Shown: piece by piece, positions 126 through 42,000 of the stretch
Numbering within the stretch: the stretch's first letter is position 1
How the letters are laid out: every line of letters begins with the position of its first letter
Assembly (NCBI RefSeq): GCF_001194135.2
Contig: NC_068985.1
Location: 62,728,889-62,774,400 of the forward strand
Length of the DNA: 45,512 nt
Direction of reading: 5' to 3'
DNA from: Octopus bimaculoides
Lineage: Eukaryota
Position numbers and translations under genes: made by a program
Notes under the pieces: model-generated
The model's input: only the letters and a program-made list of their open reading frames with translations
Databases searched by the model: none
Told to the model about the DNA's origin: nothing

Positions 126-290
126 CGTCGCCATCGTTTAACATCCGCTTTCCATGCTAGCATGGGTTGGACGATTTGACTGAGGACTGGTGAAACCGGA
201 TGGCAACACCAGGCTCCAATCTAAATTTGGCAGAGTTTCTACAGCTGGATGCCCTTCCTAACGCCAACCACTCAGAGAGTGTATGTATGC
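126..290 (-). mobile_element. RTE LINE 3' end (5'-truncated copy)
   Basis: catcgtttaacatccgctttccatgctagcatgggttggacg... is the reverse complement of the tail that follows the RTE ORF at 39083-39700. Nearly identical to the copy at 2882-3050. Confidence 0.8.
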
Positions 291-557
291 ATATATACAT
301 TCATATATACAGATATGTCTATATATGCTCATATTTATACATATGTACACATATTTATATATACACACATATATATGTATGTACATATATATACATATGT
401 AAAAAATTCCAAAGTTTATTTAATCTGCTTTGCGGGAAGGACCGTCCCAATGAAGTTGCGCATTTACCTTGCCTTCGAAACACGGAGTAGATGGAACAGG
501 GACAACTGACGAAGGGATATCCTCTTCATGTTGCATGTCTCGTTTGTCTGTTATTTT

Positions 558-2619: not shown

Positions 2620-3172
2620 TATATATCATCATTTAATGCCCATTGTCCATGCTGGCATGTGTCAGATGGTTTGATTGGGCTGGCACACTGCACCAAACTC
2701 CTATCTGATTTAGCATGGATTTCTGCATCTGGATGCCCTTCCTAATGCCAACCACTCCAAGTGTGTAATGGGTGCTCTTACGTGACATCATGATGCGTTT
2801 GTGTGCCACCAACATGGGTGCCAACTTGTGTGATACTGGTATCTGCCATGACTGCAATTTTGCTCAAATTGATATATGAATATCATCATCATCGTTTAAC
2901 GTCCGCTTTCCATGCTAGCATGGGTTGGACGATTTGACTGAGGACTGGTGAAACCGGATGGCAACACCAGGCTCCAATCTAATTTGGCAGTGTTTCTACA
3001 GCTGGATGCCCTTCCTAACGCCAACCACTAAGAGAGTGTAGTGGGTGCTTTTACGTGTCACCCGCACAAAAACGGCCACGCTCAAAATGGTGTCTTTTAT
3101 GTGCCACCCGCACAAGAGCCAGTCCAGGGGCACTGACAACGATCTCGCTCGAAAACCCTACAAAATGCACTT
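2620..3172 (-). mobile_element. Two tandem RTE 3'-end copies (one old, one young), running into the N gap
   Basis: Same catcatcgtttaacgtccgc / ctggatgcccttcctaacgccaacc tail motif at 2620-2865 and 2882-3172. Confidence 0.75.
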
Positions 3173-4890: not shown

Positions 4891-4953
4891 CTTCCTTTCT
4901 TTTCTTTCTTCTTTCGTTTCAATCCTAGTTGGTGGAGGTGTGTCTTTAGGATC
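4891..4953 (-). CDS. SNRNP70: U1-70K second coding exon (63 nt, 21 codons)
   Basis: TTTACAG acceptor, then DPKDTPPPTRIETKEERKERK (human [21 protein letters not shown]), then AAG|GTAATT donor. Phase 0-0, joining in frame to the 14099-13956 exon. Confidence 0.95.
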
Positions 4954-5219
4954 CTGTAAACAAAGGCAGAAACATTTAATTGAAATTTTCCATTGCAAGA
5001 CAGTTCTTTCACTATTCCACTTCATGTCTATATGTGATCTTCAATCCTACCCATTTAACAACTTTTGCTGTCCTGAATACACAATTCTTACAGAAACTTG
5101 TAATTATGCTGATTTCATTTAAAACTAACTACCAACTTGATTATAATCAACATGCACTGAAACTATCTTCTACAACTCACCTTTCCAAAACCAAATCTTC
5201 ACCCTGTCCCCTGAAGCTA

Positions 5220-6035
5220 TGAGGGTTAGCTGAAAAGTTCATAGGCTGATCAAAATACTCTTATGAAATGTAATCAAATGAAGTTTATTTTTTCCACAGT
5301 ACCCCCTTGTTGCAAGGATTGTATCCAATTGAAGAAGCATTCATCCTGTTGGTCACAAAAGTCATCAACAGCAGATGTCATCACGGTGATACTGGTTCCC
5401 AGCAAAGTGGTTTTTCATGTTGAGAAACAGATAATAGTTAACTAGGGCCAAATCAAGAGAACAGGGAGGTTGAAATCAAAGAATAGGAATCAACCAGTTT
5501 AAAGCCAGTCACACACAACAGCCATTGAAAGCAAGGACCTTCTGTTCCTAGGTGCTTGTCCCGATAGCAAATTGGCATAGTACTATCCACTGATGGTGTG
5601 GCCCTTTTGAAGATAGTCAATTAGCACAATGCTTTTTGTATCTCAAAAAAACTGAGACCATTACCTTCCCTGTAGATGAAAGGACCATGGCCTTCTCTGG
5701 AGTAGGCAAGGAGGGGACTTTCCACTGTATGTATTGTCTGCTTTGTCTCTGACTCAGTGATGAAGTCAACACTCATATTGGCTTAGGGAAGACCAGCTGG
5801 AACTGCCTGAAACAATGCCAGATTTTCTTGTGATGTGATCGGCCTGGTGTGGTTTTGATTAGGTGTCAGAAGACATGGCACTCACTGAGCAGAAATGTTA
5901 GTCATGCCAAGTTCATTGTGCAGAATATTCTTCACTCTCTCACAGGATACACTAATAGTATTGGCTATTTGATTTATAGTCAATTGCCTGTCATTCATCA
6001 CCACGTGGTGAACACGATCAATGTTTTTCTCGATG
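5220..6035 (-). mobile_element. Mariner transposon, 3' part with one TIR
   Basis: TA followed by the TIR gagggttagctgaaaagttcataggctga at 5220. Minus-strand translation DDRQLTINQIANTISVSCERVKNILHNELGMTNISAQ*VPCLLT is the mariner HTH/WVPRLL region; pseudogenised. Confidence 0.85.
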
Positions 6036-7505: not shown

Positions 7506-7699
7506 TTAATGAGCTTTTTTCATTAGATGCATTCTGTTATGTAAATGTATTTCATTAAATTGTGTAAGAGTACATAGCCAATGGTATATTGACTAGTAAA
7601 AGAGTTTTGTACTTTATTTTCAATGAAAATGTTTGAATGTAATCATCCCAATTGTAAGAGCCTCACAAAATGTCAGCAGCTGTTGTGGTTCCATATATA

Positions 7700-9650
7700 C
7701 AGTGGTATCTTGACTTATGAGTTTAATTCGTTGTGACGGAGCTTGTAACTCAAATTGCTCATATGCCAAATCAAATTTCCCCATTGAAATGAAACGAAAT
7801 GCCATTAATCTGTTCTGAGCCTCCCCCAATAAACATCGCAATTTTTCGTTATGCATTTTTAAATAAGAAAAATGTACTTGTAAACAACGAATGTTGTATA
7901 AGAGAACAATGCAATAGAAGGTACTGCAATAAACTGGTTTTATTATGTATAATGTACAACATTTACCTTGAAGATCAGACAACTTAAGAATGACGGTGGA
8001 GGTGGAGGAGAAAGGCTGAACTGAATAACAATCTTTTTCGCTGATTTTTGGCCTTTTTGCCACGCTTTCCTCTACAGAAATTTGATAAAAACCTGTCCAA
8101 TAAGGTCTGTTTCATCTTCACTTTCAGTGTTTCTGAAATGAGTTAGGCAAGTGTCATTAAATAGCGCTGTCACACACTCACTTGCAACTTTTCCTGGGTG
8201 TTTCTTTTTGAATAAAGTCTGAAAATTTCTCCAACATTTCCCTTAATGCACTTGTAGAGATAACTTCCTCCATCTTCTCTACCTCACCTATTTCTTGCAA
8301 AACCTCCATTAGCTCTTCTGTTGTCAGTTTCTGAGTGCAGCTCATCAATGTCACCTTCATCCACATCCAGGCCCATGGACTTGCCAAGGGAAGCAATCTT
8401 GTCCATCACTGCTACTTTGAGTCTTTCAAAGTCCGTTTCAGACACAACCTCAGGCCGCAGCTTCTTCCATGCAGAGGTCAAGGTCCTCTCTGTAACACCC
8501 TGCCAGGCCATATATCAATAATTTTGAGGCATATCATGATGTTACAGTGGTCCTTCCAGAACTCTCAAAAGGTGAGGTTTGTGCTCTCCGTCACCTCAAA
8601 GCAGCAACAGAACAGCTGCTTGGTGAAGAGCTTCTTGAAATTAGAAATCTCCCGCTGGTCCATGGGCTACAGGATAGGGATGGTGATGGGTAGAAGGTAG
8701 AGAACCTTTATAAACTTGAACTCTTCGAGTTTAGGTGGGGGAGCAGGTGCATTATCCAGGATGAAGCTTGCAGGACTAGGTTATTTTCTTGGAGATATTT
8801 CTTAATGCCAGGACCAAAGACCAAATTTACCCACTCCACAAAGAAATTCCTGGTGAGCCACGCCCTTGGATTTGCCCTCCACATAACCTGCAGTTTTTCT
8901 TTCAGAATCTCATGTGATTTAAAGGCTCTGGGGTTTTCCAAACAATAAACAAGCAGCAGCTTAATCTTGCAGTCGCTGCTTGCATCCTCTTCTCCTCTGC
9001 TGCTATATAACTCCTCCTTGGACTGTCTCATCACAATTGAAGACTTGTTGCGGGGGTATGTATCCTTCGGCTGCTATAATTCCAGCAAAAGTTTTAAGGT
9101 AATGCTCAGCTGCCTCCATATCGGCTCTCACTGCATCACAAGGGGGTGAATGCCGGTCCTCTTTTTAGAATTCTCAAACCTTGAGCCTTCTCGTAGATTA
9201 TAGCCTCCGTCATAGTATCTTCTCCATATTCTCATGGATAGATGTCTGCTGTTTAGAAATTATTTTAATGCCCTTGGTTGACACCTTCTGCTTCAGTATA
9301 GTGCAGATCGTAGTAGTGCTACGCTCATACTGCTTCGCCATGTCAACTACACGCACACCCTGGTCATATTTTTTCAATAATTTCTTTAATGCAATGCACA
9401 TCATCCATTTCTTCTCACCACTGTCCTTCGCACTCACTTTCTTCGGACCCATGGTTGGAAAGATGAAATTTTGCAAAATAACTGTAAGCACAACACTGAT
9501 GCTTCTGTAACCTGCAATGACTAAGTAAGCATTTTACCACCCGTCTAGCTAACGATCCACTAACGATCATTGCACTTGCTAACACATATCTGTCTAGCTA
9601 TCGAGTGAGACACGGGATGCTGGGCGGATGTTACAGCATTCGCTATACCA
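7700..9650 (-). mobile_element. Tigger/pogo-family DNA transposon (CENP-B HTH + DDE_1 transposase pseudogene)
   Basis: TA|CAGTGGTATCTTGACTTATGAG terminal repeat at 7700; ORF pieces MGPKKVSAKDS...VVDMAKQYERSTTTICTILKQK (HTH), QQVFNCDET and LVYCLENPRAFK...WRANPRAWLTRNFFVEW (DDE_1). The second TIR was not found. Confidence 0.9.
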
Positions 9651-10249: not shown

Positions 10250-10595
10250 GGCAGTAAGAAGCTTGCTTCTCACAAGGCTCCAGGTTCAGACCCACTGTGT
10301 AGCACCTTGGGCAAGTGTCTTCTACTATAGCCTCGGGCTGATGAAAGTTTTGAGAATGGATTTGGTAGACGGAAACTGAAAGAAGCCCGCTGTATATACA
10401 TACATATATGTTTGTGTATGTCCTCCACCATCGCTTGACAACTTATGTTGGTGTGTTTACGTCCCTGTGACTTAGCGGTTTGGCGAAAGTGACCAACAGA
10501 ATAAGTACTAGGCTTACAAAAAATGGTTGATTTGCTCGACTAAAGGCGGTGCTCCAGCATGGCCGCAGTCAAATGACTGAAACAAGTAAAAGAAT
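10250..10595 (+). mobile_element. Near full-length tRNA-derived SINE (octopus-type)
   Basis: tRNA-like head with B-box-like ggttcagaccc, body cttgggcaagtgtcttctactatagcc, internal (TA/TG) microsatellite, tail ...gactgaaacaagtaaaaga. Multiple relatives in the window. Confidence 0.85.
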
Positions 10596-10714
10596 ATCTG
10601 CACCATCTTTTTTTTTACACACAGTATAGCTGATAGTCTTCAGAAGACCAACACTTAAGTTCACTATGTACTTTGCCCATTCTCATTCAAAACAGTGAAT
10701 TATTTCACATAGAT

Positions 10715-11073
10715 ACAGGCATGACTGTTAAAAAGCTAACTTTGCAGCCACGTGGTTTTGGGTTCAGTCTCACTGTAGAGCATCTTCAGAAAGTGTCATC
10801 TACTGTAGCCCTGTGTTGACCAATTGCTTGTGAGTGAATTCTGTAGAATGTAAATTGCACAGAAACCTATCATATATGAATATGTAGTGTGTTCCGCCAC
10901 TATTGCTTGAACACCGGTGTAATATCCCTGTAACTTAACGGTTTGGCAAAAGAGTTCAACAGAATAACTATTAGACTTAAAAACAAGAAAACAGTACTGG
11001 GTCGATTCGTTCAACTAAACCATTCAAGGTAGTGCTCCAGTACAGCTGCAGTCCAATGACAAACAATAGAAGA
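10715..11073 (+). mobile_element. Older copy of the same SINE
   Basis: Colinear similarity to 10250-10595 with many CpG>TpG changes. Confidence 0.7.
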
Positions 11074-13955
11074 AATCTACTTATCATAGATTCCAAGTGA
11101 CCGTTTGACTAACAATAAATAAATGCCAAATTTTCCATCCATATTAAAATCCTTTACGTATTAGACAAATTAGCTTGGCACATTTTTTTATGTCTCTGCA
11201 CCAGATTCAAATTCTGCTTTGGCCAAGTTAGCCTTTCATCCTATCAAGTCAACAGAAGTAGCAGTCTTTAGTGAGGATCTTTGAAGCACCTCTCTGATTT
11301 TATTAACACTTTTTACCCTGTTGTTTTTCATAGAAATACAAAGATGTCCTTGCATACACCTAAGTCCGTAAGTAACCCAGGCCAGATGTACATAGCATTA
11401 CCTATAAATAAAATACGTTGGGTGACAGTACCGGTTGTAAGCCAAAATAATATAAAATATAAACTGTGACGTCTTGATCTAGTACACTACCAAACATTGA
11501 ATACTTTCCATCATTGTGTGAGCAAGACGATAGTCTCAATTTTTGTTAATACTTTCAATATTTTCTTCATCATCTACTAAAAAATTATTATACCATTTTA
11601 AATTACGAATTTCGTGTCAAAAGGGGGACATTGCCGCGATCTCTTAAAGACCTGCTAATCTCGAAAATACCCGAACGACATACTCCGGAAAAAAGCGACG
11701 CTTCACCCGACGTACAGAACACAGATCTAAAATTCGTGTGTTTCCGGAAGACGCTCAAATATGAATCTAGTACAATCCGATGAATGTAGAATACTAAAGT
11801 ATTATTATATATATGGCTTTCTGTTGCCACCCTCTACATTTAATACTGTATGTGAGTGTCTGTATTACGAAATTGGGAAGTTTATCTCAAAATTTTGTAT
11901 TTGATATTTCCATCTATTACGAAAACTAGAATTTTCTGTATTAGTGTCTAAGATTTACTTTTGTGAAATCAAAACAGCTAAATACAATTTTCTAAACAAT
12001 GTATATTTCTGATAGTCACCGAATCCATTAAAAAAAAAAAGTAACATTCTAAAAGAGAAAAAATAAAATCGTTATCCATATTACAACACAGAATTTAAGT
12101 TGCATTGTGTTCAAGCGAATATCGGGACGAATGTTTTTTTTTTATTTGCTTATTTAAAAATGTTTCAGGAACCAATCTCGATCAGACATTAGAAAGTGGT
12201 TTTATTTTGCAATAGAAAAAGAAGTGATTGGTTGGGGGGGGGGGGCTGTAATAAATTTGTTATGAACCATGACAAATGTAGGATTTTTAAGGCTAAGTTT
12301 ACGAAATCTCGGTTACTATAGCAATAGTCATAACAACCATTTATCGATCTGTAATGAACTTCAGATACTATCAACTCTAAACAAAAACAATAAAACGTTT
12401 CTACAGCTGAATTTGCAAGAAAAATCAAGCTTGCATATATACCTATAGAATGTGTGCAACAAATTCTGTTGAAAAACTCCTTGCGTTATCACAAGAAAAA
12501 TGAAAATTAGGAAAACATTGGATAACTATCAGTCTCCGTTAAGTGATTTTAATACATTCTACTTGAATTTTGTTTCTAAATCTAAGGATCTAAATGTTTC
12601 TAAATGTCGGTGATTCCCATCATCAAAAACAAGTCGAATGAAGAAGATTCAAAATCAGTAACCCATATTTTACAGAATTGGAAGGAAGTATCCTCACCGA
12701 AAATGTCTCCTGAACTGCTGTAACATGAATAAATCAGATAAGGTGGTCCAAAATAAATATATTGATACATTTCCTGTTACAGATAATTATTTATCTAAAG
12801 AAAAGGTTAAAAAGAAAGCATGGAAAGATACTCGTAAGCAATGTGTGACACACTGTCCTGCCGATAGTAAAGACGATGCTACCGTTCCATTACTTAAAAG
12901 GGAAGATTATAAAGATAGGTAAGTCAGTTGAAAACTATTTCATTTATTTATTGTAACTCAAGATGAATTACTAAAAATAACATAGTATTTTCGTATAGAG
13001 AAGTACATTAAATAAAATTAGTGTAAAAATCGAAAAATCTACAATGCTTGTGATAGGCATATATCCTTCTTAAAAAAAGAATATCTTTGGTAACGTAAGA
13101 ATTAAAAAATGGGAATTAATATTCGAGTTTTCGAAGGACTGTACAGCTTTGCCAGACAATCACTATTTAAGGAGCGCCAACGAAAAAGACGAATTTACAT
13201 AAAACGAATCAAGACCGCGGGAAAGTCAAGAGACGACCATGGTTGTAGCCTCTTGAGATTATATATTACTCATGCATCTTGGTAGCCGCGTGGCTATGTT
13301 TATTCGGATTAGTTAACCACAAACATTTTTAAAGAGAGTCACAAGTCGAAGATAGTCTCCATCAGTGAAAATTCAAGTCACGTTTAAAGAAATCAAAACA
13401 ACGAACTTATAACAGCAGTAATTGTATATTAAATAGTAACTGTGTATGTATATATATATATTATAGCAAGAGTTGGAAGAAAATTAGTAGTCCTCCCAGT
13501 AATTGATAATTATCATCGCTACTTCTGTCATCTGACAGTTTTCTAGTGTCACACACAAACAAGTTCCAAGCATGATTGTTATGTTACAATAGCGATATCG
13601 TAAATACTAACAGAACTCTTCTAAAACAATGTATCAGGCACCACGTAAATGCTGAAGGATGTCCTGTTCACCTGCAATGGCTAACGGCTCAGGCAATCAG
13701 CATGGCGACACTAGTAACCGCCATTTTGGAAAAACTCTAAGTTCACCTTTTGTCTCGCAGTTAATTCTAGTAAAGATTTTATAAATAAAAAAAGTAGACT
13801 ATAGAAACAGCATGATCCCACCCTAACCATTGAAATACATATTCATATCATCACAAATACAGAGTGGATCATATTTTAACATCAGCGAAATTAAAATTTT
13901 ATACAAATAAGCCAATAAATGTGTAATCGAAATAAAGTAAATTGATCAGGTTTAC

Positions 13956-14099
13956 CTCGAATTCCTTGAAATATTGTGCTACTCCTGTATATGGCACTCT
14001 CTTTTTTTCGTGACTTAGTTTGTCAACTGGAGGATAATAAGGAATAGGATCTCTGGCCGCAAACAAAGCCAACAGATTCGGTGGCAAAAATTGTGTCAT
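13956..14099 (-). CDS. SNRNP70: U1 snRNP 70 kDa protein, first coding exon (48 codons)
   Basis: Translates to [48 protein letters not shown], the diagnostic U1-70K N-terminus. ATG at 14099-14097; ends at a phase-0 donor GAG|GTAAAC (GT at 13955-13954), matching the intron position I recall for the human gene. Confidence 0.97.
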
Positions 14100-14149
14100 T
14101 GTCTCCGTAAATTAATTATCGATTTTAAATGAATAATATTCGGAAAAAA

Positions 14150-14480
14150 TCTGTCGTTAAGAAATAAGTGAAGCCAGTAATGTGTGCAATTTCCTTCTTT
14201 CTTTTTTTTTAAACGTTTTTAAGTGCTCCGCGTTGGAAACAGTTAACGTAATTCAAAAGGCTTCAATATGTCCTTAATGTTTTGTTGAAGGATAAAGTAG
14301 TCGACAGCGCAAAAATGGTTCCACACTGAAAATTCAAAATTCAAGTTTAAAAAAAAATTTGCTAATCACAAAGACTGATTGCCTACGTGTACCTTGCAAG
14401 TGAACTGGAGATCAACTGCGAAATCTGACTGGTAATGTCTACAGCAGTTCGTGTCGTCAGCCAATAGCACATGCTCACTT
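14150..14480 (-). promoter_or_regulatory. Probable SNRNP70 5'UTR intron/promoter region
   Basis: Pyrimidine tract plus CAG acceptor on the minus strand ending at 14151 (cttatttcttaacgacag), 51 nt before the ATG. Weak candidate donor AAG|GTACAC at 14392; CCAAT box (cagccaatag ~14459-14468); CpG-retaining sequence. TSS not determinable. Confidence 0.4.
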
Positions 14481-15328
14481 CCTATGTCTGCTCCTCCACA
14501 GCAATGGTGCTCGATGATGATACTGCTGCCAACGCCATCTACTTCCCTTTTACTCCCACTATCTCTCTCAGTTTCTATTATTTTTACTTACTTTCTCGAT
14601 ATCTGACTTTTTCGTTCTCTTGGTATGTTATTGTGAAAGGCAGGGCGAGAGAAGGAAACAATCATTGACTGACTTTGTACTCGTTTATGCTGAACTTTCA
14701 ACATATAATGATTTAAAAGGAATGCAGCTTTCCGAAAAAGAAGTAATGTTTGTTATCAGTTCAGTACGTGAACATGTACCTTCGTGCAAGTTGGTTATAG
14801 GTGGGCCAGATCGAATAACCTGTTCGCATTGAATAATATCTTCATGTATGCCTTCATCACTGTTAATGGTTATCATTGGTCTTCAGAGCAGCAGCAGCTT
14901 CTACAATTTTTACACACACGCGCACATACTTCTTTTTTTTTCTTTTTACCTTTTTTTTCTTTTTACTTTCCATTAAATACTAAAATACAGCGAAAGCGAA
15001 CTCTGCAGATGCTGAAAATTCTATGATGACTGCTGTATATATGTATATACCTCGACAAGTATATGTATCTATGTACACACACACATATATATACACGCAT
15101 ATACATGTATATATATATATACGTATAAATACATATATATATATATTATTCATACATATCACAGAGTTGATGGATAAAAAGTATGTTGAGAATTACACGG
15201 AAAACCACAGCTATATAAATTTTTTTTAACTGATGCACATCAAAGAATGATGGATACATAAGATATGTGTATGTAAACGGCACATCTAACACGCACTCAC
15301 ATAAACACTTCTCTCTTTATATATATAT

Positions 15329-15372
<44 letters not shown>

Positions 15373-15635
15373 GTTTGGTTATTTCTACTTTGTGAAAATC
15401 TATTGATTTTGGCCAACTATTAACATTTTAATGTGCTCTGTCTCACCAAAATCGTTCGCTTTCTTCAATCGGCAAACACCCACACTTACTGTACTCTATA
15501 TTCCTCTTGATGCGATTTGTTTTGTTTGTGTTTGAATGTATCTGAATGTCGTGAGAGAAGATTCTTCTGTATGCAGCAGCAGCGGCAGACGCCACAAAAT
15601 CCGACCTGAAGGGGATGAGGTAAGAACCTTTATTT

Positions 15636-15653
15636 TATTATTATTATTATTCC

Positions 15654-15692
<39 letters not shown>

Positions 15693-15704
15693 TATTATTA
15701 TTAT
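15636..15704. repeat. (ATT)n microsatellite
   Basis: Directly visible, just downstream of the GTAAGA donor at 15620. Confidence 0.95.
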
Positions 15705-17049
15705 CATCATCGAATGTCACATTTGAATAGATCTGATTACTACACCATTGCAACAGCTATCAATAGTGATAATTAATGTATTTAACCATGTGACATTCAG
15801 TATTTTCAGAGACGAACTTGAATTTCTAAGTGCCTTCTTAAGTTTAAATAAATACACATATTTATTATTTTATGTATGCATGAATATGCATAACGATGTG
15901 TATATGTTTGCATACGTGTGAACATGTATGTTTGTATGCTTATATGAGTGTAGGGTGAGAACTGGTACATTCGAGCAGAAGTACTCTCCTAGTCATGCCC
16001 AACTCAATTAATTCCCCTTGCGCCAATACTACCTTTGTATCTGATTAGAAAGATAACATCAAGGGCATAGTTAGTGTCAATTGACTGAAACCACGTTATT
16101 TAACTCTGAATTTAAAAAGAAAATAGTACAGTAAAGACGGGACATTTTAGTACTGTGTTCTGAAGTGGGATGACCAGATTGTGAATACTTCTTGGCTGTG
16201 ATAAAAACCATCTCAGTACTAACACCTTTCAGGTGTACAGAATGGACATTTTACAGCCATCTCTCCTACCACCAAAGACAGTCCTATTCCTAACAGATGC
16301 AACATTTCAGGGTTGAAGAAATTGTAGGTATGTGATATCAGAGGCCAGTAAATGTGTGCTATGTACAAAAGAAGAGATCGAAACGAACGTCTGCTACACT
16401 CCTCGCGGGGAAGGAACAGATGTACAAATTTATATGGGTAGATAACAGTGTTGAAGTCATAGATATATGATCCGGAAAGGCAGGGGGAGGCAACTGTCCT
16501 CTCAAATTCGGGTAAGGCAAGAAGAAAAATATGTGACGGGGAAAGTAAAAATATTAACTAACAATGTTGCCGAATTGATTGTACAGAAAAAAAAAGGTAA
16601 TATACGTATGCCTAAGAGGGCGTGTATGTAAACATACATAGCGACCGCTTGGCAACAGCAGCTGTATCGTGTATTATTATAATCTATTGTGGTACCCGTG
16701 GAAAAAAAAACGATGGGTAATAAAATCTTCAGCTATATTTGTGGACATCAGAGGTAATAAGTTGCTCTGATTTTTCTGAAACAGACTCGTTTAGCTAACT
16801 GAGCTTATGTATGTGGGTGATAGACAGAAAGACTGCAATAAAAGATATTCAGATATATATAACCGAACACACGCACAGCTCTTAAGTCACATAAGTGGTT
16901 TAGAAACAAAATCTGCAACGCTAGTACAAAATTATCCCCCCACCCAAATTATGCAATATTTACCAGTATCATAACACTTGCAAACCACTATCTGAATCAT
17001 GAAGGATGCTTCCGTGCTCTCAAACTGCAGTTGATCTTTCTGGCAAGAT

Positions 17050-21711: not shown

Positions 21712-23770
21712 TTGATGGAGAATGAATGGGAGGAGGAGAATCTGTCAAATGTTGACCTAATTGAGGGACTAGCTACCCAAATAGACAGTACCTTGGTAGA
21801 TAAAGCAATTAAGGATATGAAGACAGGGAAAGCCTCTGACCCATCAGGGATCACCATTGAGATGCTTAAAATATCTGGCAGTGTGAGTTATGGTCTAATC
21901 ACCTGTATTGTAATTCAGGTGGTTCACAAAGGAGTCCTACCCAATGACTGGTGTAGCAGCACCATAGTCAACTGCTGCAAAGGTAAAGGTGATGCCTTGG
22001 AAATAAATTACAGAGGTATCAAATTGTTGGATCAGGTGATGAAAGTTACAGAGAGGGTCATAGCCCAACTAATTAGAGAGAGTATTAGTCTCAAGGAGAT
22101 GCAGTTTGGTTTTGTGCCAGGGAGAAACACCACTGGTGCTATATTTCTGGTAAGGCAACTTCAGGAAAAATACCTAGCCAAATATAAACCTCTGTACTTG
22201 GCTTTTGTTGACTTGGAGAAAGCCTTATCTGGTGATCAATGCAAAAACTGGGGATAGACGAGTGGTTTGTGAGAGCTGTACATGCCATGTACAAAGAAGG
22301 ACACTATCAGTAAGGAGGGGATTGACAATGAGTACAGTGAAGAATTCAAGGTGCAGGTAGGTGTTCACCAAGGATCAGTCCTCAGCCCCATCTTGTTCAT
22401 CATAGTCCTCCAGGCAGTAAGAGAGGAATTTCAGACAGGCTACCCCTGGGAGCTCCTCTATGCTGATGACTTTGTTCTTACAGCTGGATCACTACCAGAA
22501 CTACAAAAGTTTCGGGTATGGAAGCAAGATCTAGAATCAAAGGGCCTTGGAGTTAACCTAGCAAAAACCAAAGTTTTAGTAAGTAGAAAGGCAGAAAAAT
22601 CACAAACCCCTTCATGTAGATGGCCTGTTCAATCGGTAGAAACTCTATGAGATGTACCTGGTGTAAGATAGGGACACAATAAGTACAGCAATATCAAAAG
22701 AGGGTTAACAGGGAAAATAACTTTTGTGTGTGGAAGATGCATAGGTATAATAAACACTGAAAATGTACAGAAAATAGACTTCATCCACTGTCAGTGGGGT
22801 AAGCTAGCAGTAGATAGCTTCCATTACCTAGGTGACCAAGTTAGTACAGAGGTAGATGCTCCAAGAGCGTAGCTGTGAGAAGAAGAATAGGCTAGGCAAA
22901 GTTCAGAGAGCTCCTACCCCTGCTGGCAACAAAGAGCCTCCCAGCTCAGAGTAAAAGGTAAATTGTGTGATGCTTGTGTGCAAACAGCTATGCTACACGA
23001 CAGTGAAACATGAGTTGTGACAGCCAAGGACATGTGTAGGCTTGAAGGAAATGAAGCCAGCATGTTTTGCTGGAGGTGCAATGTCAGTGTGCATGTTTGA
23101 CAGAGTGTAAGCATCTTTAGAAAAAAGTTGGGCATAAGAGGCATCAGGTGTGGTATGCAAAAGAGATGACTGCACTCGTATGGTCATGTGATGCTTATGG
23201 ATGAGGATAGCTGTGTAAAGAAGTGCCGATTTATAACTCTGAAGGGAACCTGTAGTAGCGGTAGACCCAGGAACTTTGGGCTTCACAGAGGTAATGACTA
23301 GTGACCAAGACCTTTGACGACATGCTGTGCTTGAGAAGACTTGCCAAGCCAAGTGAAATCATCATGGTCAATGCTGGTTTTGTACAATTGGCACCTTTGC
23401 CGGTGACACAAAAAGTGCCTTTCGAGTGTGGGACCTCACGGAGACAAAGTGGCATGTGAAAAACTCCTTTCAAGTGTTGGGTGTCACAGAGTCAAAGATG
23501 AATGACCAAGACCTTTGCCATTATATCATGCTTGAGAAGAAACCCATCAAGCCAAGTAAAATCACAGTTATGGCATATATTGGTGTCACACAAATGGCAC
23601 CTGAGCCAGTGGCACATAAAAAAAGTGCCTGTTACAATCTTGGAGTGGTTAACATTAGGAAGGGCATCCAGCTATAGAAACCATGCCAATAAGGTTGGTG
23701 TCTGGTGCAGCCTTCCAGCTTGCCAGTCCTGGTTAAACCATCCAACCCATGCCAGCATGGACAACAGATC
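21712..23770 (+). mobile_element. RTE-clade LINE, 5'-truncated (RT domain + 3'UTR), pseudogenised
   Basis: ORFs with GKASDPSGI, NYRGIKLLDQVMKV, LYLAFVDLEKA, GVHQGSVLSP and LLYADD; RTE tail ending ...ccaacccatgccagcatggacaacagat. Confidence 0.95.
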
Positions 23771-27721: not shown

Positions 27722-28185
27722 ATATCATCATTGTCATTTAACATCCGCTTTCTGTGCTGGCATGAGTTAGACAGTTTAATTGAGAACTGGCAGGCCAGGA
27801 GGCTGCACCTGGCTCCAGTCTGATTTGGTATGATTTCTACAGCTGGATGTACTTCCTATCACCAACCACTCTAACAGTGTAGTGGGTGCTTTTTACATGC
27901 CACCAGCACGGGAGCCAGTCAGGCAGCACTGGCATTGGCCATGCTCAAATGGTGCTTTTTATATGCTGCTGGCACGGGTACCAATCAGGCAATAGTGGCA
28001 TCAACCAGACTTGAATGGTGCTTTTTACACACCATTGGTATCAGCCATGCTCAAATGGTGCTTCTTACGTGTCACCAGCACAGCTGCAAGTCAGCTGTCA
28101 CTGGCCACGACTACAATTTCACTTGGTTTAACAGGTCTTCAGAAGCACGGCATATCAGCCAACAATTGAAGGGTGCTTTTAAATG
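27722..28185 (-). mobile_element. RTE 3'UTR copy at the truncated 5' end of the gypsy element
   Basis: Same tail family as 39083-39700. Confidence 0.75.
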
Positions 28186-39082: not shown

Positions 39083-42000
39083 GCTACTGTCATCATCGTC
39101 ATTGTTTAACGTCCGCTTTCTGTACTGGCATGGGTTGGACAGTTTGACCAAGGGCTGGCAAGCTAGAAGCCTGCACCAAGCTCCAATCTGATCTGGCAAA
39201 GTTTCTACTTCTGGATGCCCTTCCTAATGCCAACCGCTCTGAGAGTGTATTGGGTGCTGTTTATGTACCACTGGCATGAAGGCCAGTCAGGCAGTACTAG
39301 CATCAACCACGCTCGAATGGTGCTTTTTACGTGCCACGAGCATGGGAGTAGTCAGCTGGCACTGGCATCGACCATGCTTGAATGATGTTTTTTACGTACC
39401 ACCAACATGGGAGCCAGTCAGACAGCACTGGCAACAACCACACTTGAATGGTGCTTTTTTACAGGCCACTAACCCAAGACCAGTCAGGTGGCACTGGCAT
39501 TGACCATGCCCAAATGGTGTTTTTTATGTCCCACTGGCACAGGTGCCAACCAGGCTGTACTGTCATCAGACACGACAATGACTAAACTTGACTCAACAGG
39601 TCTTTGCAAGTGCAGTTTATTGCCCAATCATTGAAGGGTCCTCTTAAATGGGCTGGTTATGCTGCACTGGCATAAGCCATGGTTACAGTCTCACTTGGCT
39701 TGCCAGGTCTTCTTAAGTACAGCATATCTCCAAAAGTCTCAGTCACTTGTCATCGCTTCTGTGAGGCCAACATTTGAAAGTCGTACTTCACCACCTCATC
39801 CCAGATCTTCCTGGGTCTACCTCTTCCGCAGGTTCCCTCTACAGCTAGGACGTGACACTTTTTCACACAGCTGTCCTCATCCATACGCAGCACAGAACCA
39901 TACCAACGCAGTCGTCTTTCTTGCACACCACATCTGATGCTTTTTATGTCCAACTTTTCTCTCAGGGCACTTACACTCTGTTGTGTATGCACATTGACAT
40001 TACACATCCAACGGAGCATACTAACTTCATTCCTTGCAAGCTTACGCATGTCCTCACTGCCATGTAACATAGCTGTTCGCACACATGTGTCATACAGTAT
40101 ACCTTTTACTCTGAGCGAGAAGCCCGTTGTCACCAGCAGATGTACGAGCTCTCTGTACTTTGCCCTGGCTATTTTTATTCTAGCAGCTACACTCTCAGAG
40201 CATCCACTTCCACTACTGACTTGCTCACATAGGTAACGGAAGCTGTTTTCTGCACATTTTCAGTGTTTATTGCTCCTGAGCATTTGCCACACACAAAAAA
40301 TATTTTCCCAGTTAGCCTTCCATTGATATTGCTGCACCTTTGTGTCCAGAGCTTACACAGGTATATCTTAAGGAGTTTCTACCTCTGACTTTTCTACAGA
40401 TCAAGCAGGGCCATCTACCTGAAGGGATTTGTGATTTGTCTGCTTTCCTACTTAAGACTTTAATTTTTGCTAGATTGACTCTAGAGCCCTTCAATTTTAG
40501 ACCTTGCTTTCACACCTGAAACTTCTCTAGTTCTGATAGTAACTCAGCAACTAGAGCAAGGTCATCAGCATAGAGGAGCTCCCAGGAGCAACCTGTCTTG
40601 ATTTCCTCTGTGATCGCCTGGAGGACTATGATAAATAGGAAGGGGCTGAGGACTGAACCTTGGTGGACCCCTACCTCTACCCGGAATTCTTCATTACACT
40701 CGTTGCCAACCCTCACCTTACTGACAGCATCCCTGCACATGGTTTGTGCAGCTCTTACTAACCACTCATCTATCCTTAGTTTCCGCATTGACCACAGATA
40801 AGGGATCGGGGGTCCCTGTCAAAGACTTTCTCCATGTCAACAAAAGCCAGATATAGAGGTTTATCTTTGGCTAAGTACTTCTCCTGTAGCTGTCTTACCA
40901 GAAATATAGCATCAATGGTGCTTTTCCCTGGCACAAACCTAAACTGCATCTCATCTAAACTATCTCTCTCCCGAATTAGATGGGCTATGACCCTCGCCAT
41001 GACTTTCATTACCTGATCCAACAACTTGATACCTCTGTAATTATTCATATCTAATGCATCGCCTTTACCTTTGTGGCAGTTGATTATGGTGCTACTACAC
41101 CAGTCATTGGGTATGACTCCTTCATATATCACCTGATTGACTATACGGGTGACTAGACTATAGCTGATACCGCCAGATATTTTAGGGTTAGGGTGATTCC
41201 TGATGGTCTGAGGTCTTTCCCTGTCTTCATACCCTTAATTGCTTTACCTACCAAGATACTGTCAATTTGGATAGCTGGTCCTTCTGTTGCCTCGACATTC
41301 GACAGGCTCTCTTTCTCCTGTTCCTTCTCTTCATTTAGCAATCTCATTAAATGCAAGTGAGCCATCATCCATGCGGACACATTTCTCTCCTATGACAAAA
41401 CAATTTTCTCTCACACCCTGTCTTACAATATGAAACACTTCAAATCTTTGGTCTTCACAACGCAGGACATTGGCAAATTTTTTCTTATCTGCTTCTCCTC
41501 TGGCTAAGTAAACCTGTCTCCTAGCTTCCTTTCTGGCAATCTGATACATTTCACTGCTACCACCGTTATTCAAGTCCTTCCATACCTGTTTCTTTTCCTT
41601 GATGGCCCTGTCAACTACATTGTTCCACCACCACACTATCTTGGGTCGAGAGGGGACTTTGCACCATCCAAAGATCTGGTCAGTAGACCTCAACAGGTTG
41701 TCCCGTAGGAACCTCCAGTTGTTTTCCACATCATGTGATGCTATATCCTCCTATTTTGTCAAAAGCTTCGTGTAATATATCTCTAAATCTCTGTCCATTC
41801 GCAGAATCCTTAACCTTCCAGCCCTTCTCCATGCTGGGCATCCATTTAGCCCTGATCCTGAAGTCGCTAACGACTAATCTATGTTGAAGGGTGCATTCTT
41901 CACCTGGGAAGGTTTTGGTGTCTTTCCTGTTTCCTGGCAAAGATGTAGTCAATTTGTCTATTGTGTCCACCAGATAGGTGAATAGGTGACTGGCAGGTTT

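What the first reader, a model, noticed from the sequence alone, without database searches (positions are those of the whole stretch)
11334..13789. Candidate spliced gene nested antisense within the SNRNP70 intron
Seen on the + strand: exon A 11334-11367 (tttttcatag acceptor, CC|GTAAGT donor); exon B 12676-12918 (attttacag acceptor, AG|GTAAGT donor, 243 nt, open, phase 2-2); exon C from 13638 (TACTAAC branch-point match at 13605-13611, 27 nt before tatcag). Joined, they read without stops: ..IQRCPCIHLSP-IGRKYPHRKCLLNCCNMNKSDK...DDATVPLLKREDYKDR-HHVNAEGCPVHLQWLTAQAISMATLVTAILEKL* (TAA at 13738-13740). AATAAA follows at 13784-13789, about 170 nt short of the SNRNP70 exon. An alternative acceptor at 13760 would give an immediate stop. 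The region is repeat-free and retains CpG. I do not recognise the protein, and the 5' exons are unidentified. Inference: a lineage-specific coding gene or an antisense lncRNA positioned to interact with U1-70K expression.
Basis: partly seen in the sequence, partly recalled or inferred. Interest (0 to 1): 0.7.

Follow-up and report, generated by a model that had tools for sequence, protein, structure and literature searches.

The report
Potassium-channel start exons inside SNRNP70 intron
Two short stretches on the strand opposite the splicing-factor gene SNRNP70 are real, evolutionarily conserved protein-coding exons, most likely alternative beginnings of a neighbouring Shaker-type potassium-channel gene and not a new small gene or a non-coding RNA.

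Summary
Exon B (12676-12918, + strand) is a genuine coding exon. It has orthologues at the same place, antisense in SNRNP70 intron 1, in a second octopus, three cuttlefish lineages and an unnamed non-cephalopod invertebrate genome. dN/dS is 0.03 in cuttlefish (25 synonymous versus 4 non-synonymous changes) and 0.13-0.21 between the octopuses.

Conservation starts at the ATG. Except in this octopus, the 'stop' TAA lies inside a 5' splice site (CT|GTAAGT), so this is a first coding exon, not a terminal one.

In the non-cephalopod genomes both exons lie upstream of, on the same strand as and in phase with the single-exon core of a Shaker/Kv1 potassium channel that sits head-to-head with SNRNP70. 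The best reading is therefore alternative N-terminal exons of a Kv1 gene whose 5' end overlaps SNRNP70.

- Exon A has no support.
- The exon C acceptor, the TAA stop and the AATAAA are incidental.
- The lncRNA reading is refuted for exon B and the mini-exon, and so is lineage-specificity.
- Not shown: transcripts, and the Kv1 core, which lies outside the window.
- In this octopus the mini-exon's donor reads CT, not GT; this is unexplained.

The parts
12676..12918 (+). Exon B: a conserved coding exon, proposed to be an alternative N-terminal coding exon of a Shaker/Kv1 gene. Acceptor AG is at 12674-12675 and donor GTAAGT at 12919-12924. The exon ends with two bases of a codon (phase 2).
   Evidence: Orthologues P0121 (88% identity) and P0122 (44%) were found by exhaustive phmmer. 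Synteny with SNRNP70 exon 1 holds in cuttlefish and in L022/L023. dN/dS is 0.03 in sepiids and 0.21 between the octopuses, where the exon has 0 gaps against gap-rich flanks. The AG|GTAAGT donor is kept in all cephalopod sequences, and GGCAG|GTACGT in L023.
12725..12727 (+). ATG (MNKSDK...), the probable start codon of the exon-B isoform in octopods.
   Evidence: This Met and the following KS.K are invariant in all five orthologues. Between the two octopuses the 17 codons upstream change 4 non-synonymous: 1 synonymous, while dN/dS from the Met onward is 0.125. The acceptor AG is displaced by 2 nt between the two species. The N-terminal 44 codons found in sepiids and L023 are absent from the window. 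The start assignment is an inference.
13702..13740 (+). Mini-exon: a conserved 12-codon ORF, MATLVTAILEKL-TAA. In other taxa it is a first coding exon of 35 nt followed by CT|GTAAGT. Here the donor reads CT|CTAAGT (C at 13737).
   Evidence: The peptide is MATLVSAILETL in sepiids, L019 and L022/L023. There are 11 variable sites, distributed 2/1/8 by codon position. The non-octopus taxa differ only synonymously. Conservation starts at the ATG, and no in-phase acceptor exists in the non-cephalopods. In-phase acceptors exist at the Kv1 core. The octopus donor scores -3.7 bits.
13638..13701 (+).
   Evidence: The acceptor scores -1.46. Nothing upstream of 13699 aligns to cuttlefish. Two sepiids differ by a 2-nt indel in the corresponding stretch.
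11334..11367 (+).
   Evidence: The donor scores 4.5 bits. It is one of 10 equally good in-phase candidates in the intron. It has no counterpart in cuttlefish. It lies in CpG-depleted sequence, upstream of the CpG peak at 11500-11800.
11500..11800 (.). CpG-rich segment (16 CpG in 200 nt, o/e 1.8), a candidate promoter for the exon-B transcript. This is an inference only.
   Evidence: It contains cttccggaag (read). No comparative or transcript evidence was obtained.
13100..13400 (.). CpG-rich block conserved between the two octopuses, a candidate promoter or 5' UTR for the mini-exon transcript. This is an inference only.
   Evidence: Identity to L001 is 81% and CpG o/e is 1.2-1.5. In sepiids the 300 nt upstream of the mini-exon are 88-95% conserved without a coding signature.
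13956..14099 (-). SNRNP70 (U1-70K) coding exon 1. It lies inside the proposed first intron of the + strand gene.
   Evidence: tblastn against human U1-70K gives E 2e-16. It is 98% identical to cuttlefish at the protein level.
4891..4953 (-). SNRNP70 coding exon 2 (DPKDTPPPTRIETKEERKERK). It bounds intron 1.
   Evidence: The acceptor at 4953 scores 10.5 bits.

Best explanation
The + strand features are alternative 5' (N-terminal) coding exons of a Shaker-type (Kv1) potassium-channel gene. That gene lies head-to-head with SNRNP70, and its 5' end reaches into SNRNP70 intron 1.

Proposed mechanism:
- Transcripts start either upstream of exon B or just upstream of the mini-exon.
- Each of these exons ends after two bases of a codon and is spliced to a common channel exon. 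In the non-cephalopod genomes examined, that exon holds the whole core in one piece: T1 domain, S1-S6, pore and the ETDV tail.
- The core lies to the right of SNRNP70 exon 1 and, in cephalopods, beyond this window.
- The result is channel isoforms with different cytoplasmic N-termini. One is a short hydrophobic MATLVSAILETL tip. The other is a longer, Ser/Lys/Asp-rich extension with an invariant Cys-Leu, an M.KS.K motif and a D(D/E)xTxPLL motif.
- N-termini of Shaker channels set fast (N-type) inactivation and can carry sorting signals, so the exons probably diversify inactivation kinetics or trafficking.

Shown:
- Both exons are under coding constraint.
- Their position relative to SNRNP70 is conserved.
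- Their donors share the same phase.
- In non-cephalopod genomes there is a Kv1 core on the same strand with in-phase acceptors.

Inferred:
- The actual splicing.
- The presence of the Kv1 core downstream in cephalopods.
- The functional role of either N-terminus.
For: 1. Coding constraint.
- Sepiid exon B (L002 versus L008) has 29 differences, of which 25 are synonymous. Codon positions are 3/2/24 and dN/dS is 0.03 (binomial p 7e-14). Flanks are about 80% identical and carry indels.
- The octopus pair is 89.7% identical in the exon with 0 gaps, against 72-81% in gapped flanks. dN/dS is 0.21 overall and 0.125 from the Met (p 5e-4 and 6e-5).
- A pairwise coding scan of 4.7 kb ranks exon B first. 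SNRNP70 exon 1 served as the positive control.

2. Conserved location. In cuttlefish, exon B and the mini-exon lie antisense in intron 1 of SNRNP70, between exons 1 and 2. The same holds in L022/L023. L019 keeps the mini-exon.

3. The mini-exon is a first exon.
- The peptide MATLVSAILETL is identical in three non-octopus lineages, which differ only synonymously.
- Conservation begins at the ATG.
- No in-phase AG lies upstream in L019 or L022/L023.
- CT|GTAAGT follows directly.

4. Exon B must be spliced onward. In L023 the donor GGCAG|GTACGT has no adjacent in-frame stop. In sepiids the frame is coding right up to an acceptor whose TAG is in frame.

5. A shared phase and a common acceptor.
- Exon B and the mini-exon both end in phase 2 in every taxon.
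- In L022/L023 the Kv1 core starts with ttctacag|C ATG GAG (8.0 bits), which is in phase with both.
- A second in-phase site, tccag|GTCAT, is shared with L019.

6. Identity of the neighbour. Its best match among solved structures is Drosophila Shaker (E 1e-219), then Kv1.2 (1e-209). Kv3, Kv2 and Kv4 reach only 1e-84 or weaker. The precomputed Pfam domains are BTB_2 and Ion_trans.

7. Precedent. Protostome Shaker genes use alternative splicing to vary inactivation (PMC3519636). From memory and not verified here: the squid SqKv1A-D cDNAs differ only in their 5' UTR and first ~34 coding nt.
Against: - No transcript or junction evidence was obtainable.
- Every public contig carrying exon B is collinear with the genome.
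- No spliced protein isoform appeared in the large protein collection. That tool also missed a known 88% relative, so this absence is weak evidence.
- The Kv1 core is not in the 31 kb to the right of SNRNP70 in the window, nor in the cuttlefish loci. The link in cephalopods therefore rests on homology with other taxa.
- In this octopus the mini-exon's donor is CT, not GT.
- Octopus exon B lacks the N-terminal third of the sepiid exon, and its acceptor is not fixed in position.
- In cephalopods an in-phase AG|C sits right before the mini-exon ATG. This would also allow exon B to be joined to the mini-exon.
- The exon-B peptide has no detectable similarity to any described channel N-terminus (Pfam and PDB gave nothing).
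Confidence: 0.68

Rival explanations
1. This is a self-contained small protein gene nested antisense in SNRNP70 intron 1, essentially the reader's model with a corrected last exon. Exon B would be spliced (AG|) to an acceptor directly before the mini-ORF (AG|C ATG at 13700|13701). The product would end ...DYKD-S-MATLVTAILEKL* and be polyadenylated near 13784-13810.
For: - In octopus and sepiids an AG|C lies immediately before the ATG and is in phase with the exon-B donor.
- TAA ends the frame in all taxa.
- AATAAA lies at 13784-13789.
- In this octopus the mini-exon has no usable donor, so here the ORF really does stop.
Against: - The AG|C acceptor is very weak: 0.08 bits in octopus, -5.0 and -0.5 in sepiids.
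- It is absent in L019 and L022/L023, where the peptide is nevertheless perfectly conserved and starts at its own ATG.
- A consensus GTAAGT follows the 35th nucleotide in four of five lineages.
- Neither the AATAAA nor anything after the TAAGT is conserved.
Confidence: 0.13
2. Exon B is the last coding exon of a small protein. Translation would stop at the TAA inside 'GTAAGT' (12920-12922), and the transcript would end after AATAAA at 13011-13016. The mini-ORF would be an unrelated element.
For: - The TAA is in frame in all cephalopod sequences.
- AATAAA lies 92 nt downstream in octopus.
- In cuttlefish, AATAAA at L002 2572 sits where a conserved block ends.
- Short contigs from runs SRR292714xx cover L002 1660-2700 unspliced.
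Against: - In L022/L023 the same exon ends GGCAG|GTACGT with no stop at that place.
- The full 8-nt donor consensus AGGTAAGT is kept between octopus and cuttlefish, although the neighbouring codons changed.
- The library type of the short contigs is unknown, and they match genomic DNA exactly.
Confidence: 0.07
3. The exons are 5' exons of some other downstream gene in cephalopods, because the old Kv1-SNRNP70 neighbourhood was broken by the large genome rearrangements of coleoids.
For: The Kv1 core was not found within 31 kb. Coleoid genomes are heavily rearranged (PMC9023564, title and abstract as listed).
Against: The mini-exon peptide is conserved at 10 of 12 residues (octopus) and 12 of 12 (sepiids) with taxa where it sits next to Kv1. 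This argues for the same partner. Cephalopod introns of tens of kb are usual, so 31 kb without the core is not informative.
Confidence: 0.05
4. The feature is a chance ORF, a transposon relic or an antisense non-coding RNA without protein-level function.
For: - Open frames of this length are common in the window (91 of 243 nt or more).
- There is no Pfam family.
- The composition is AT-rich and the translation Lys-rich.
Against: - dN/dS is 0.03-0.21 with strong third-position bias.
- There are no indels in the exon while the flanks are full of them.
- Orthologues exist in cuttlefish and in a non-cephalopod genome.
- No repeat copies exist in the window.
Confidence: 0.01

Closest known systems
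Alternative 5' exons of Drosophila Shaker (ShA, ShB, ShC, ShD and ShH N-termini)
   Same: Several mutually exclusive 5' coding exons are joined to a common channel core. They give N-termini that differ in length and in N-type inactivation. PMC3519636 states this in general terms for protostome Shaker genes.
   Different: - The peptides here show no sequence similarity to the fly N-termini.
- Function is untested.
- The 5' exons lie inside the first intron of another gene on the opposite strand.
Squid SqKv1A-D cDNA family (Rosenthal, Liu and Gilly 1997, J Neurosci 17:5070; recalled from memory, paper not held)
   Same: It is a cephalopod Kv1 family whose members, as I recall, differ only in the 5' UTR and the first ~34 coding nucleotides. 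That is about the size of the 35-nt mini-exon. The ORF of SqKv1A from nt 43 reads DLKNPDEENN..RVIINVSG (supplement of PMC7192619), so its N-terminus before T1 is short.
   Different: - I could not read the first 14 residues of SqKv1A, so identity with MATLVSAILETL is untested.
- SqKv1A may be a different Kv1 paralogue from the one next to SNRNP70.
Human and mouse KCNA7 (Kv1.7) next to SNRNP70 on 19q13.33 (from memory)
   Same: A Kv1 gene and SNRNP70 are neighbours. If the recollection is right, the head-to-head pairing seen in L019 and L022/L023, and implied for cephalopods, is ancient microsynteny.
   Different: As far as I know the mammalian genes do not overlap, and Kv1.7 N-terminal isoforms arise from alternative start codons. 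The adjacency was not verified with the tools; one search gave only gene lists.
Opposite-strand host/nested and overlapping gene pairs
   Same: One gene's exons lie in an intron of another gene on the other strand, with potential for transcriptional interference or shared regulation (PMC11694760, PMC12274878 and PMC13309782, abstracts as listed).
   Different: Here the relationship is most likely a reciprocal 5' overlap, with each gene's first exon in the other's first intron, and not full nesting.

Membership tests
Alternative N-terminal exons of a Shaker/Kv1 (KCNA) channel gene | The exon is protein-coding and under purifying selection in the stated frame. | tested here: met
   Exon B has dN/dS of 0.03 in sepiids and 0.13-0.21 in octopods. 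The mini-exon has 8 of 11 variable sites at codon position 3, and its peptide is identical in three lineages.
Alternative N-terminal exons of a Shaker/Kv1 (KCNA) channel gene | The exon lies upstream of, and on the same strand as, a Kv1 core exon. | tested here: inconclusive
   This is met in L022/L023 for both exons and in L019 for the mini-exon. In the window and in the cuttlefish loci the core is not within reach.
Alternative N-terminal exons of a Shaker/Kv1 (KCNA) channel gene | The exon has a 5' splice site at its end, in phase with an acceptor of the core exon. | tested here: inconclusive
   This is met for exon B in all taxa (AG|GTAAGT, or GTACGT in L023). It is met for the mini-exon in sepiids, L019 and L022/L023 (CT|GTAAGT), with in-phase acceptors at the core. 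It is not met for the mini-exon of this octopus, which reads CT|CTAAGT.
Alternative N-terminal exons of a Shaker/Kv1 (KCNA) channel gene | The neighbouring channel belongs to the Shaker/Kv1 subfamily. | tested here: met
   The L023 ORF matches Drosophila Shaker at E 1e-219 and Kv1.2 at 1e-209. Kv3, Kv2 and Kv4 reach only 1e-84 or weaker. The motifs ERVVINVSGLRFET, TMTTVGYGDM and a C-terminal ETDV are present.
Alternative N-terminal exons of a Shaker/Kv1 (KCNA) channel gene | Spliced mRNAs join the exon to the core, and the isoforms differ in gating or sorting. | not testable with these tools
   No read-level RNA data were available. The protein collection gave no spliced isoform, but it is insensitive (compare).
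Self-contained nested (intronic, antisense) protein-coding gene | A complete ORF, with start, stop and terminal exon with acceptor and poly(A) signal, lies within the host intron and is conserved among orthologues. | tested here: not met
   - The stop after exon B is absent in L023.
- The mini-ORF has no acceptor in non-cephalopods and is followed by a donor.
Antisense long non-coding RNA | There is no selection on any reading frame. | tested here: not met
   The excess of synonymous over non-synonymous changes is strong.
Transposon-derived or chance ORF | There are repeat copies or a transposon protein domain, and no orthologous conservation. | tested here: not met
   - No repeat family covers the region.
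- No Pfam family matches.
- Syntenic orthologues are present.

The most novel reading that the evidence does not exclude
The promoters and first coding exons of a neuronal Kv1 channel sit inside the first intron of SNRNP70, the gene for U1-70K. Channel transcription would therefore run antisense through SNRNP70 exon 1 and its promoter. This arrangement is conserved from cephalopods to more distant invertebrates. It could be a selected regulatory coupling between a core splicing factor and an excitability gene, through transcriptional interference or shared chromatin. Alternatively, the 12-codon ORF could act on its own as a conserved micropeptide or upstream ORF, as its state in this octopus (intact ORF, no donor) might suggest.
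Probability: 0.12. Interest if true: 0.6.

Novelty: new member of a known kind. Interest (0 to 1): 0.42.

Why it matters
The work turns an anonymous intronic ORF into two conserved coding exons with a concrete, testable gene model. That model can correct or extend annotation of a cephalopod Kv1 channel and of the SNRNP70 locus.

If the model holds:
- It defines two N-terminal channel isoforms. One is a 12-residue tip that is invariant in the sepiid and non-cephalopod genomes examined and differs at two residues in this octopus. Their effects on inactivation or targeting can be measured directly.
- It documents an old head-to-head overlap between a housekeeping splicing gene and a neuronal channel gene.

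It also shows a general trap. In-frame TAA 'stops' that are really the TAA of a GTAAGT donor made 5' exons look like a closed small gene.

Tried and rejected
- **Word-indexed protein search.** The search with the joined 125-aa peptide found nothing. Only the exhaustive representative search found the orthologues. A later word-indexed search with the cuttlefish sequence returned only the known cluster.
- **Exact look-ups.** Window ORFs (SNRNP70 exon 1 ORF, exon B ORF, an integrase-like ORF) are not in the collection. The window's own species is therefore not represented.
- **Family and RNA scans.** Pfam and PDB searches of the peptides gave no family. Rfam at gathering and at E<=1, plus a tRNA scan, found nothing credible in 10.5-14.5 kb.
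- **Metagenome scans.** DNA pattern scans for exon B's 3' end and for the mini-exon gave 0 hits.
- **Upstream exon search.** No octopus-cuttlefish conservation exists upstream of exon B. A candidate sepiid first exon (L002 1399-1452, MIAFLLTPGLVKQQPYKQ|GTCTGT, in frame, 3 synonymous: 1 non-synonymous) has no octopus counterpart and stays a candidate only.
- **Strand of the 45-nt block.** I considered that it is a minus-strand element, either a YY1-like GCCAT motif or a small minus-strand ORF. With two lineages the antisense frame looked nearly as good. With four lineages, the donor and the position next to Kv1, the + strand reading wins.
- **Second cuttlefish mini-exon.** L002 4406-4485 looked like a further alternative first exon, but it is broken in L008.
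- **Literature.** I looked for the run accessions, for a known gene nested in SNRNP70 and for the squid Kv1 N-termini. Only ERR12945500 could be tied to a species, Acanthosepion esculentum. The 1997 squid paper is not held.
Full report
**1. The observation**

Every coordinate in the finding reproduces.
- Exon A is 11334-11367, exon B is 12676-12918 and exon C runs from 13638.
- TACTAAC lies at 13605-13611, TAA at 13738-13740 and AATAAA at 13784-13789.
- The three pieces joined read 125 codons without a stop.

SNRNP70 is on the minus strand, with coding exon 1 at 14099-13956 and exon 2 at about 4953-4891. The candidate is therefore antisense in a roughly 9-kb first intron.

The region carries no repeat shared with the rest of the window. 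It keeps CpG, with o/e 1.03 against 0.41 for the window. The CpG-rich block extends from about 11.4 to 16.5 kb around the SNRNP70 5' end, with local peaks at 11500-11800, 13000-13400 and 14000-14400.

**2. Is it more than chance?**

An open frame of this length is not unusual. The window has 91 open stretches of 243 nt or more.

I scored splice sites with a simple PWM built from remembered consensus frequencies.
- Donor B is strong (10.5 bits).
- Acceptors A and B are moderate (about 7).
- Donor A is weak (4.5).
- Acceptor C is very poor (-1.5).

Only three AG...GT open segments in the window match exon B's scores, and the other two lie in transposon sequence. Markov simulations of the intron produce one in about 0.7% of trials at thresholds set after the fact, and in 8-14% at looser ones.

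Exon A is one of ten equally good in-phase candidates upstream. From sequence alone, exon B is mildly remarkable and exons A and C are not.

**3. Exon B is a conserved coding exon**

The word-indexed protein search found nothing. An exhaustive phmmer search of 1.84 billion representatives with the exon-B open stretch found two relatives.
- P0121 is 65 aa and 88% identical.
- P0122 is 122 aa and 44% identical, with E 1e-8.

Their contigs are all collinear genomic-type sequence. They fall into four groups.
- A second octopus (L001).
- One cuttlefish species (L002 and others). Run ERR12945500 is cited as Acanthosepion esculentum short reads in bioRxiv 10.1101/2025.04.22.649952.
- Cuttlefish 90-93% identical to it (L007, L009, L011, L012).
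- A more distant decapodiform, about 80% identical (L008).

In cuttlefish the exon lies in the same place. SNRNP70 exon 1 is 2.5 kb downstream on the other strand, and exon 2 is upstream in L008.

Substitution patterns show clear purifying selection on this frame.
- Between L002 and L008 the 375-nt exon has 29 differences, 25 synonymous and 4 not. Codon positions are 3/2/24, dN/dS is 0.03 and p is 7e-14. The flanks are about 80% identical with many indels.
- A frame-by-frame scan of the 4.7-kb alignment ranks this exon first. SNRNP70 exon 1 was the positive control, and no other block showed a coding signature.
- Between the two octopuses the exon is 89.7% identical without a single gap, against 72-81% in gap-rich flanks. 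dN/dS is 0.21, and 0.125 from the internal Met.

This refutes the lncRNA and chance readings.

**4. Structure of exon B**

In sepiids the coding signal runs up to the acceptor (7 synonymous: 2 non-synonymous changes in the 53 codons before the first Met). The acceptor's TAG is in frame, so the reading frame enters from an upstream exon.

The octopus exon differs.
- It is 131 nt shorter and lacks the KDLD..RIRRSKS segment, which is nowhere else in the window.
- The acceptor AG is displaced by 2 nt between the two octopuses.
- The 17 codons before the Met evolve about neutrally.

Translation in octopods therefore probably starts at ATG 12725. This is an inference.

The donor AG|GTAAGT is kept in all cephalopod sequences.

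**5. The end of 'exon C' is really a first exon**

Only 13699-13743 aligns to cuttlefish. It encodes MATLVTAILEKL* in octopus and MATLVSAILETL* in cuttlefish.

With two lineages the antisense frame looked almost as good. The acceptors before it are very weak: 0.08, -5.0 and -0.5 bits.

The matter was settled by fetching SNRNP70 exon-1 loci of more distant, unnamed invertebrate genomes, using U1-70K exon-1 ORFs found earlier.
- L019 and L022/L023 contain the same 12-codon ORF antisense, 40-90 nt from SNRNP70 exon 1.
- The peptide is identical there, with only synonymous differences. Over all lineages 11 sites vary, 2/1/8 by codon position.
- Conservation begins exactly at the ATG. The preceding residue is S, I or T.
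- No in-phase AG lies upstream in those genomes.
- The 35th nucleotide is followed by GTAAGT in sepiids, L019 and L022/L023.

The 'stop' TAA is therefore the TAA of a 5' splice site, just as at the end of exon B.

**6. What the exons belong to**

L022/L023 also contain a homologue of exon B (E 4e-14), further into intron 1 on the same antisense strand.
- It has a strong acceptor in the same phase as in sepiids (PKDLD...).
- Its donor is GGCAG|GTACGT, which is not followed by a stop. The exon must therefore be spliced onward.

Exon B and the mini-exon both end after two bases of a codon in every taxon.

In L019 and L022/L023, a single 511-522-codon ORF follows on the same strand, 1.3 kb past the mini-exon and beyond SNRNP70 exon 1.
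- It carries ERVVINVSGLRFET, TMTTVGYGDM and a C-terminal ETDV.
- Its best solved relatives are Drosophila Shaker (E 1e-219) and Kv1.2 (1e-209), far ahead of Kv3, Kv2 and Kv4.
- In L022/L023 it begins ttctacag|C ATG GAG (8.0 bits), which is in phase with both upstream donors.
- A second in-phase acceptor, tccag|GTCAT, is shared with L019.

The simplest model is that exon B and the mini-exon are alternative 5' coding exons of a Shaker/Kv1 gene. That gene overlaps SNRNP70 head-to-head, with SNRNP70's exon 1 and promoter lying in the channel gene's first intron.

Alternative splicing that varies inactivation is described for protostome Shaker genes (PMC3519636). From memory, squid SqKv1A-D cDNAs differ only in the 5' UTR and first ~34 coding nt, and human KCNA7 neighbours SNRNP70. 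I could verify neither with the tools.

**7. Mechanism**

Two promoters are inferred, at the CpG peaks near 11.5-11.8 kb and 13.0-13.4 kb. The second is 81% conserved between the octopuses. They would give transcripts that splice exon B or the mini-exon to the common core.

The products would differ only in the cytoplasmic N-terminus.
- One is a short hydrophobic tip.
- The other is a longer, probably disordered extension with invariant C-L, M.KS.K and D(D/E)xTxPLL motifs.

By analogy with Shaker, I expect effects on N-type inactivation and perhaps on sorting, the latter through the dileucine-like PLL motif. Both expectations are speculative.

**8. What does not fit**

- The Kv1 core is not in the window or in the cuttlefish loci.
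- No transcript evidence exists in either direction.
- In this octopus the mini-exon's donor is CT instead of GT.
- The cephalopod AG|C before the ATG would permit joining exon B to the mini-exon.

**9. Verdict**

The feature is real and coding, but it is best filed as new alternative N-terminal exons of a known kind of gene in an overlapping arrangement with SNRNP70. It is not a lineage-specific gene or a lncRNA.

Noticed in passing
window 13737: Every other taxon has the G of the mini-exon's GTAAGT donor here. This octopus has C (CT|CTAAGT), while the 12-codon ORF itself is intact. This could be loss of the isoform, a polymorphism or an assembly error.
   Followed up: partly
L002 4406-4485 (also L009, L011); L008 about 12600-12680: Cuttlefish carry a tandem second copy of the mini-exon (METFILSAILIIRITGKRFQIFPKFS, donor GAG|GTAAAC, phase 2) with a hydrophobic-then-basic make-up. 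In the more distant L008 it has a stop, a 1-nt deletion and no donor.
   Followed up: partly
L019 7367-8935, L022 7465-9000, L023 7353-8888 (minus strand of those loci): A single-exon Shaker/Kv1 channel core lies head-to-head with SNRNP70 in three unnamed invertebrate assemblies. This recalls the KCNA7-SNRNP70 neighbourhood in human, which is recalled from memory and not verified.
   Followed up: partly
L002 2381-2586, 3268-3644, 3913-4200: These blocks in the cuttlefish intron are 85-98% identical to L008 and have no coding signature. One ends at an AATAAA (L002 2572). They may be regulatory elements or UTR.
   Followed up: no
L002 1399-1452: This is a candidate first coding exon upstream of cuttlefish exon B (MIAFLLTPGLVKQQPYKQ|GTCTGT). 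It is in frame with exon B and differs from L008 by 3 synonymous and 1 non-synonymous change. It has no octopus counterpart.
   Followed up: partly
window 10400-16500: This block keeps CpG (o/e about 0.7-1.8) in an otherwise CpG-depleted window (0.41). It covers the SNRNP70 5' end and both + strand exons, with sharp peaks at 11500-11800, 13000-13400 and 14000-14400.
   Followed up: partly
window 7600-9500 (-), 21712-22650 (+), 40510-41132 (-): Transposon remnants are present. A pogo/Tigger-type DDE_1 fragment lies inside SNRNP70 intron 1. Two reverse-transcriptase (RVT_1) fragments form inverted copies about 18 kb apart.
   Followed up: partly
window 203-295, 2687-2779, 2960-3052, 27801-27893, 39169-39261: This is a five-copy family of a ~93-nt SINE-like repeat. 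It fits an octopod origin, since the Sepia genome paper notes that SINE expansion is specific to octopuses.
   Followed up: no
window 5218-5305 and L008 5357-5444: A short block is conserved between octopus and cuttlefish (72% in translation, with stops) near SNRNP70 exon 2, but on opposite sides of that exon in the two species.
   Followed up: no
L020, L021 (TARA and another metagenome assembly): In this planktonic eukaryote SNRNP70 intron 1 is only about 1 kb and holds neither exon. CDC37-like and ANAPC15-like ORFs lie nearby.
   Followed up: no
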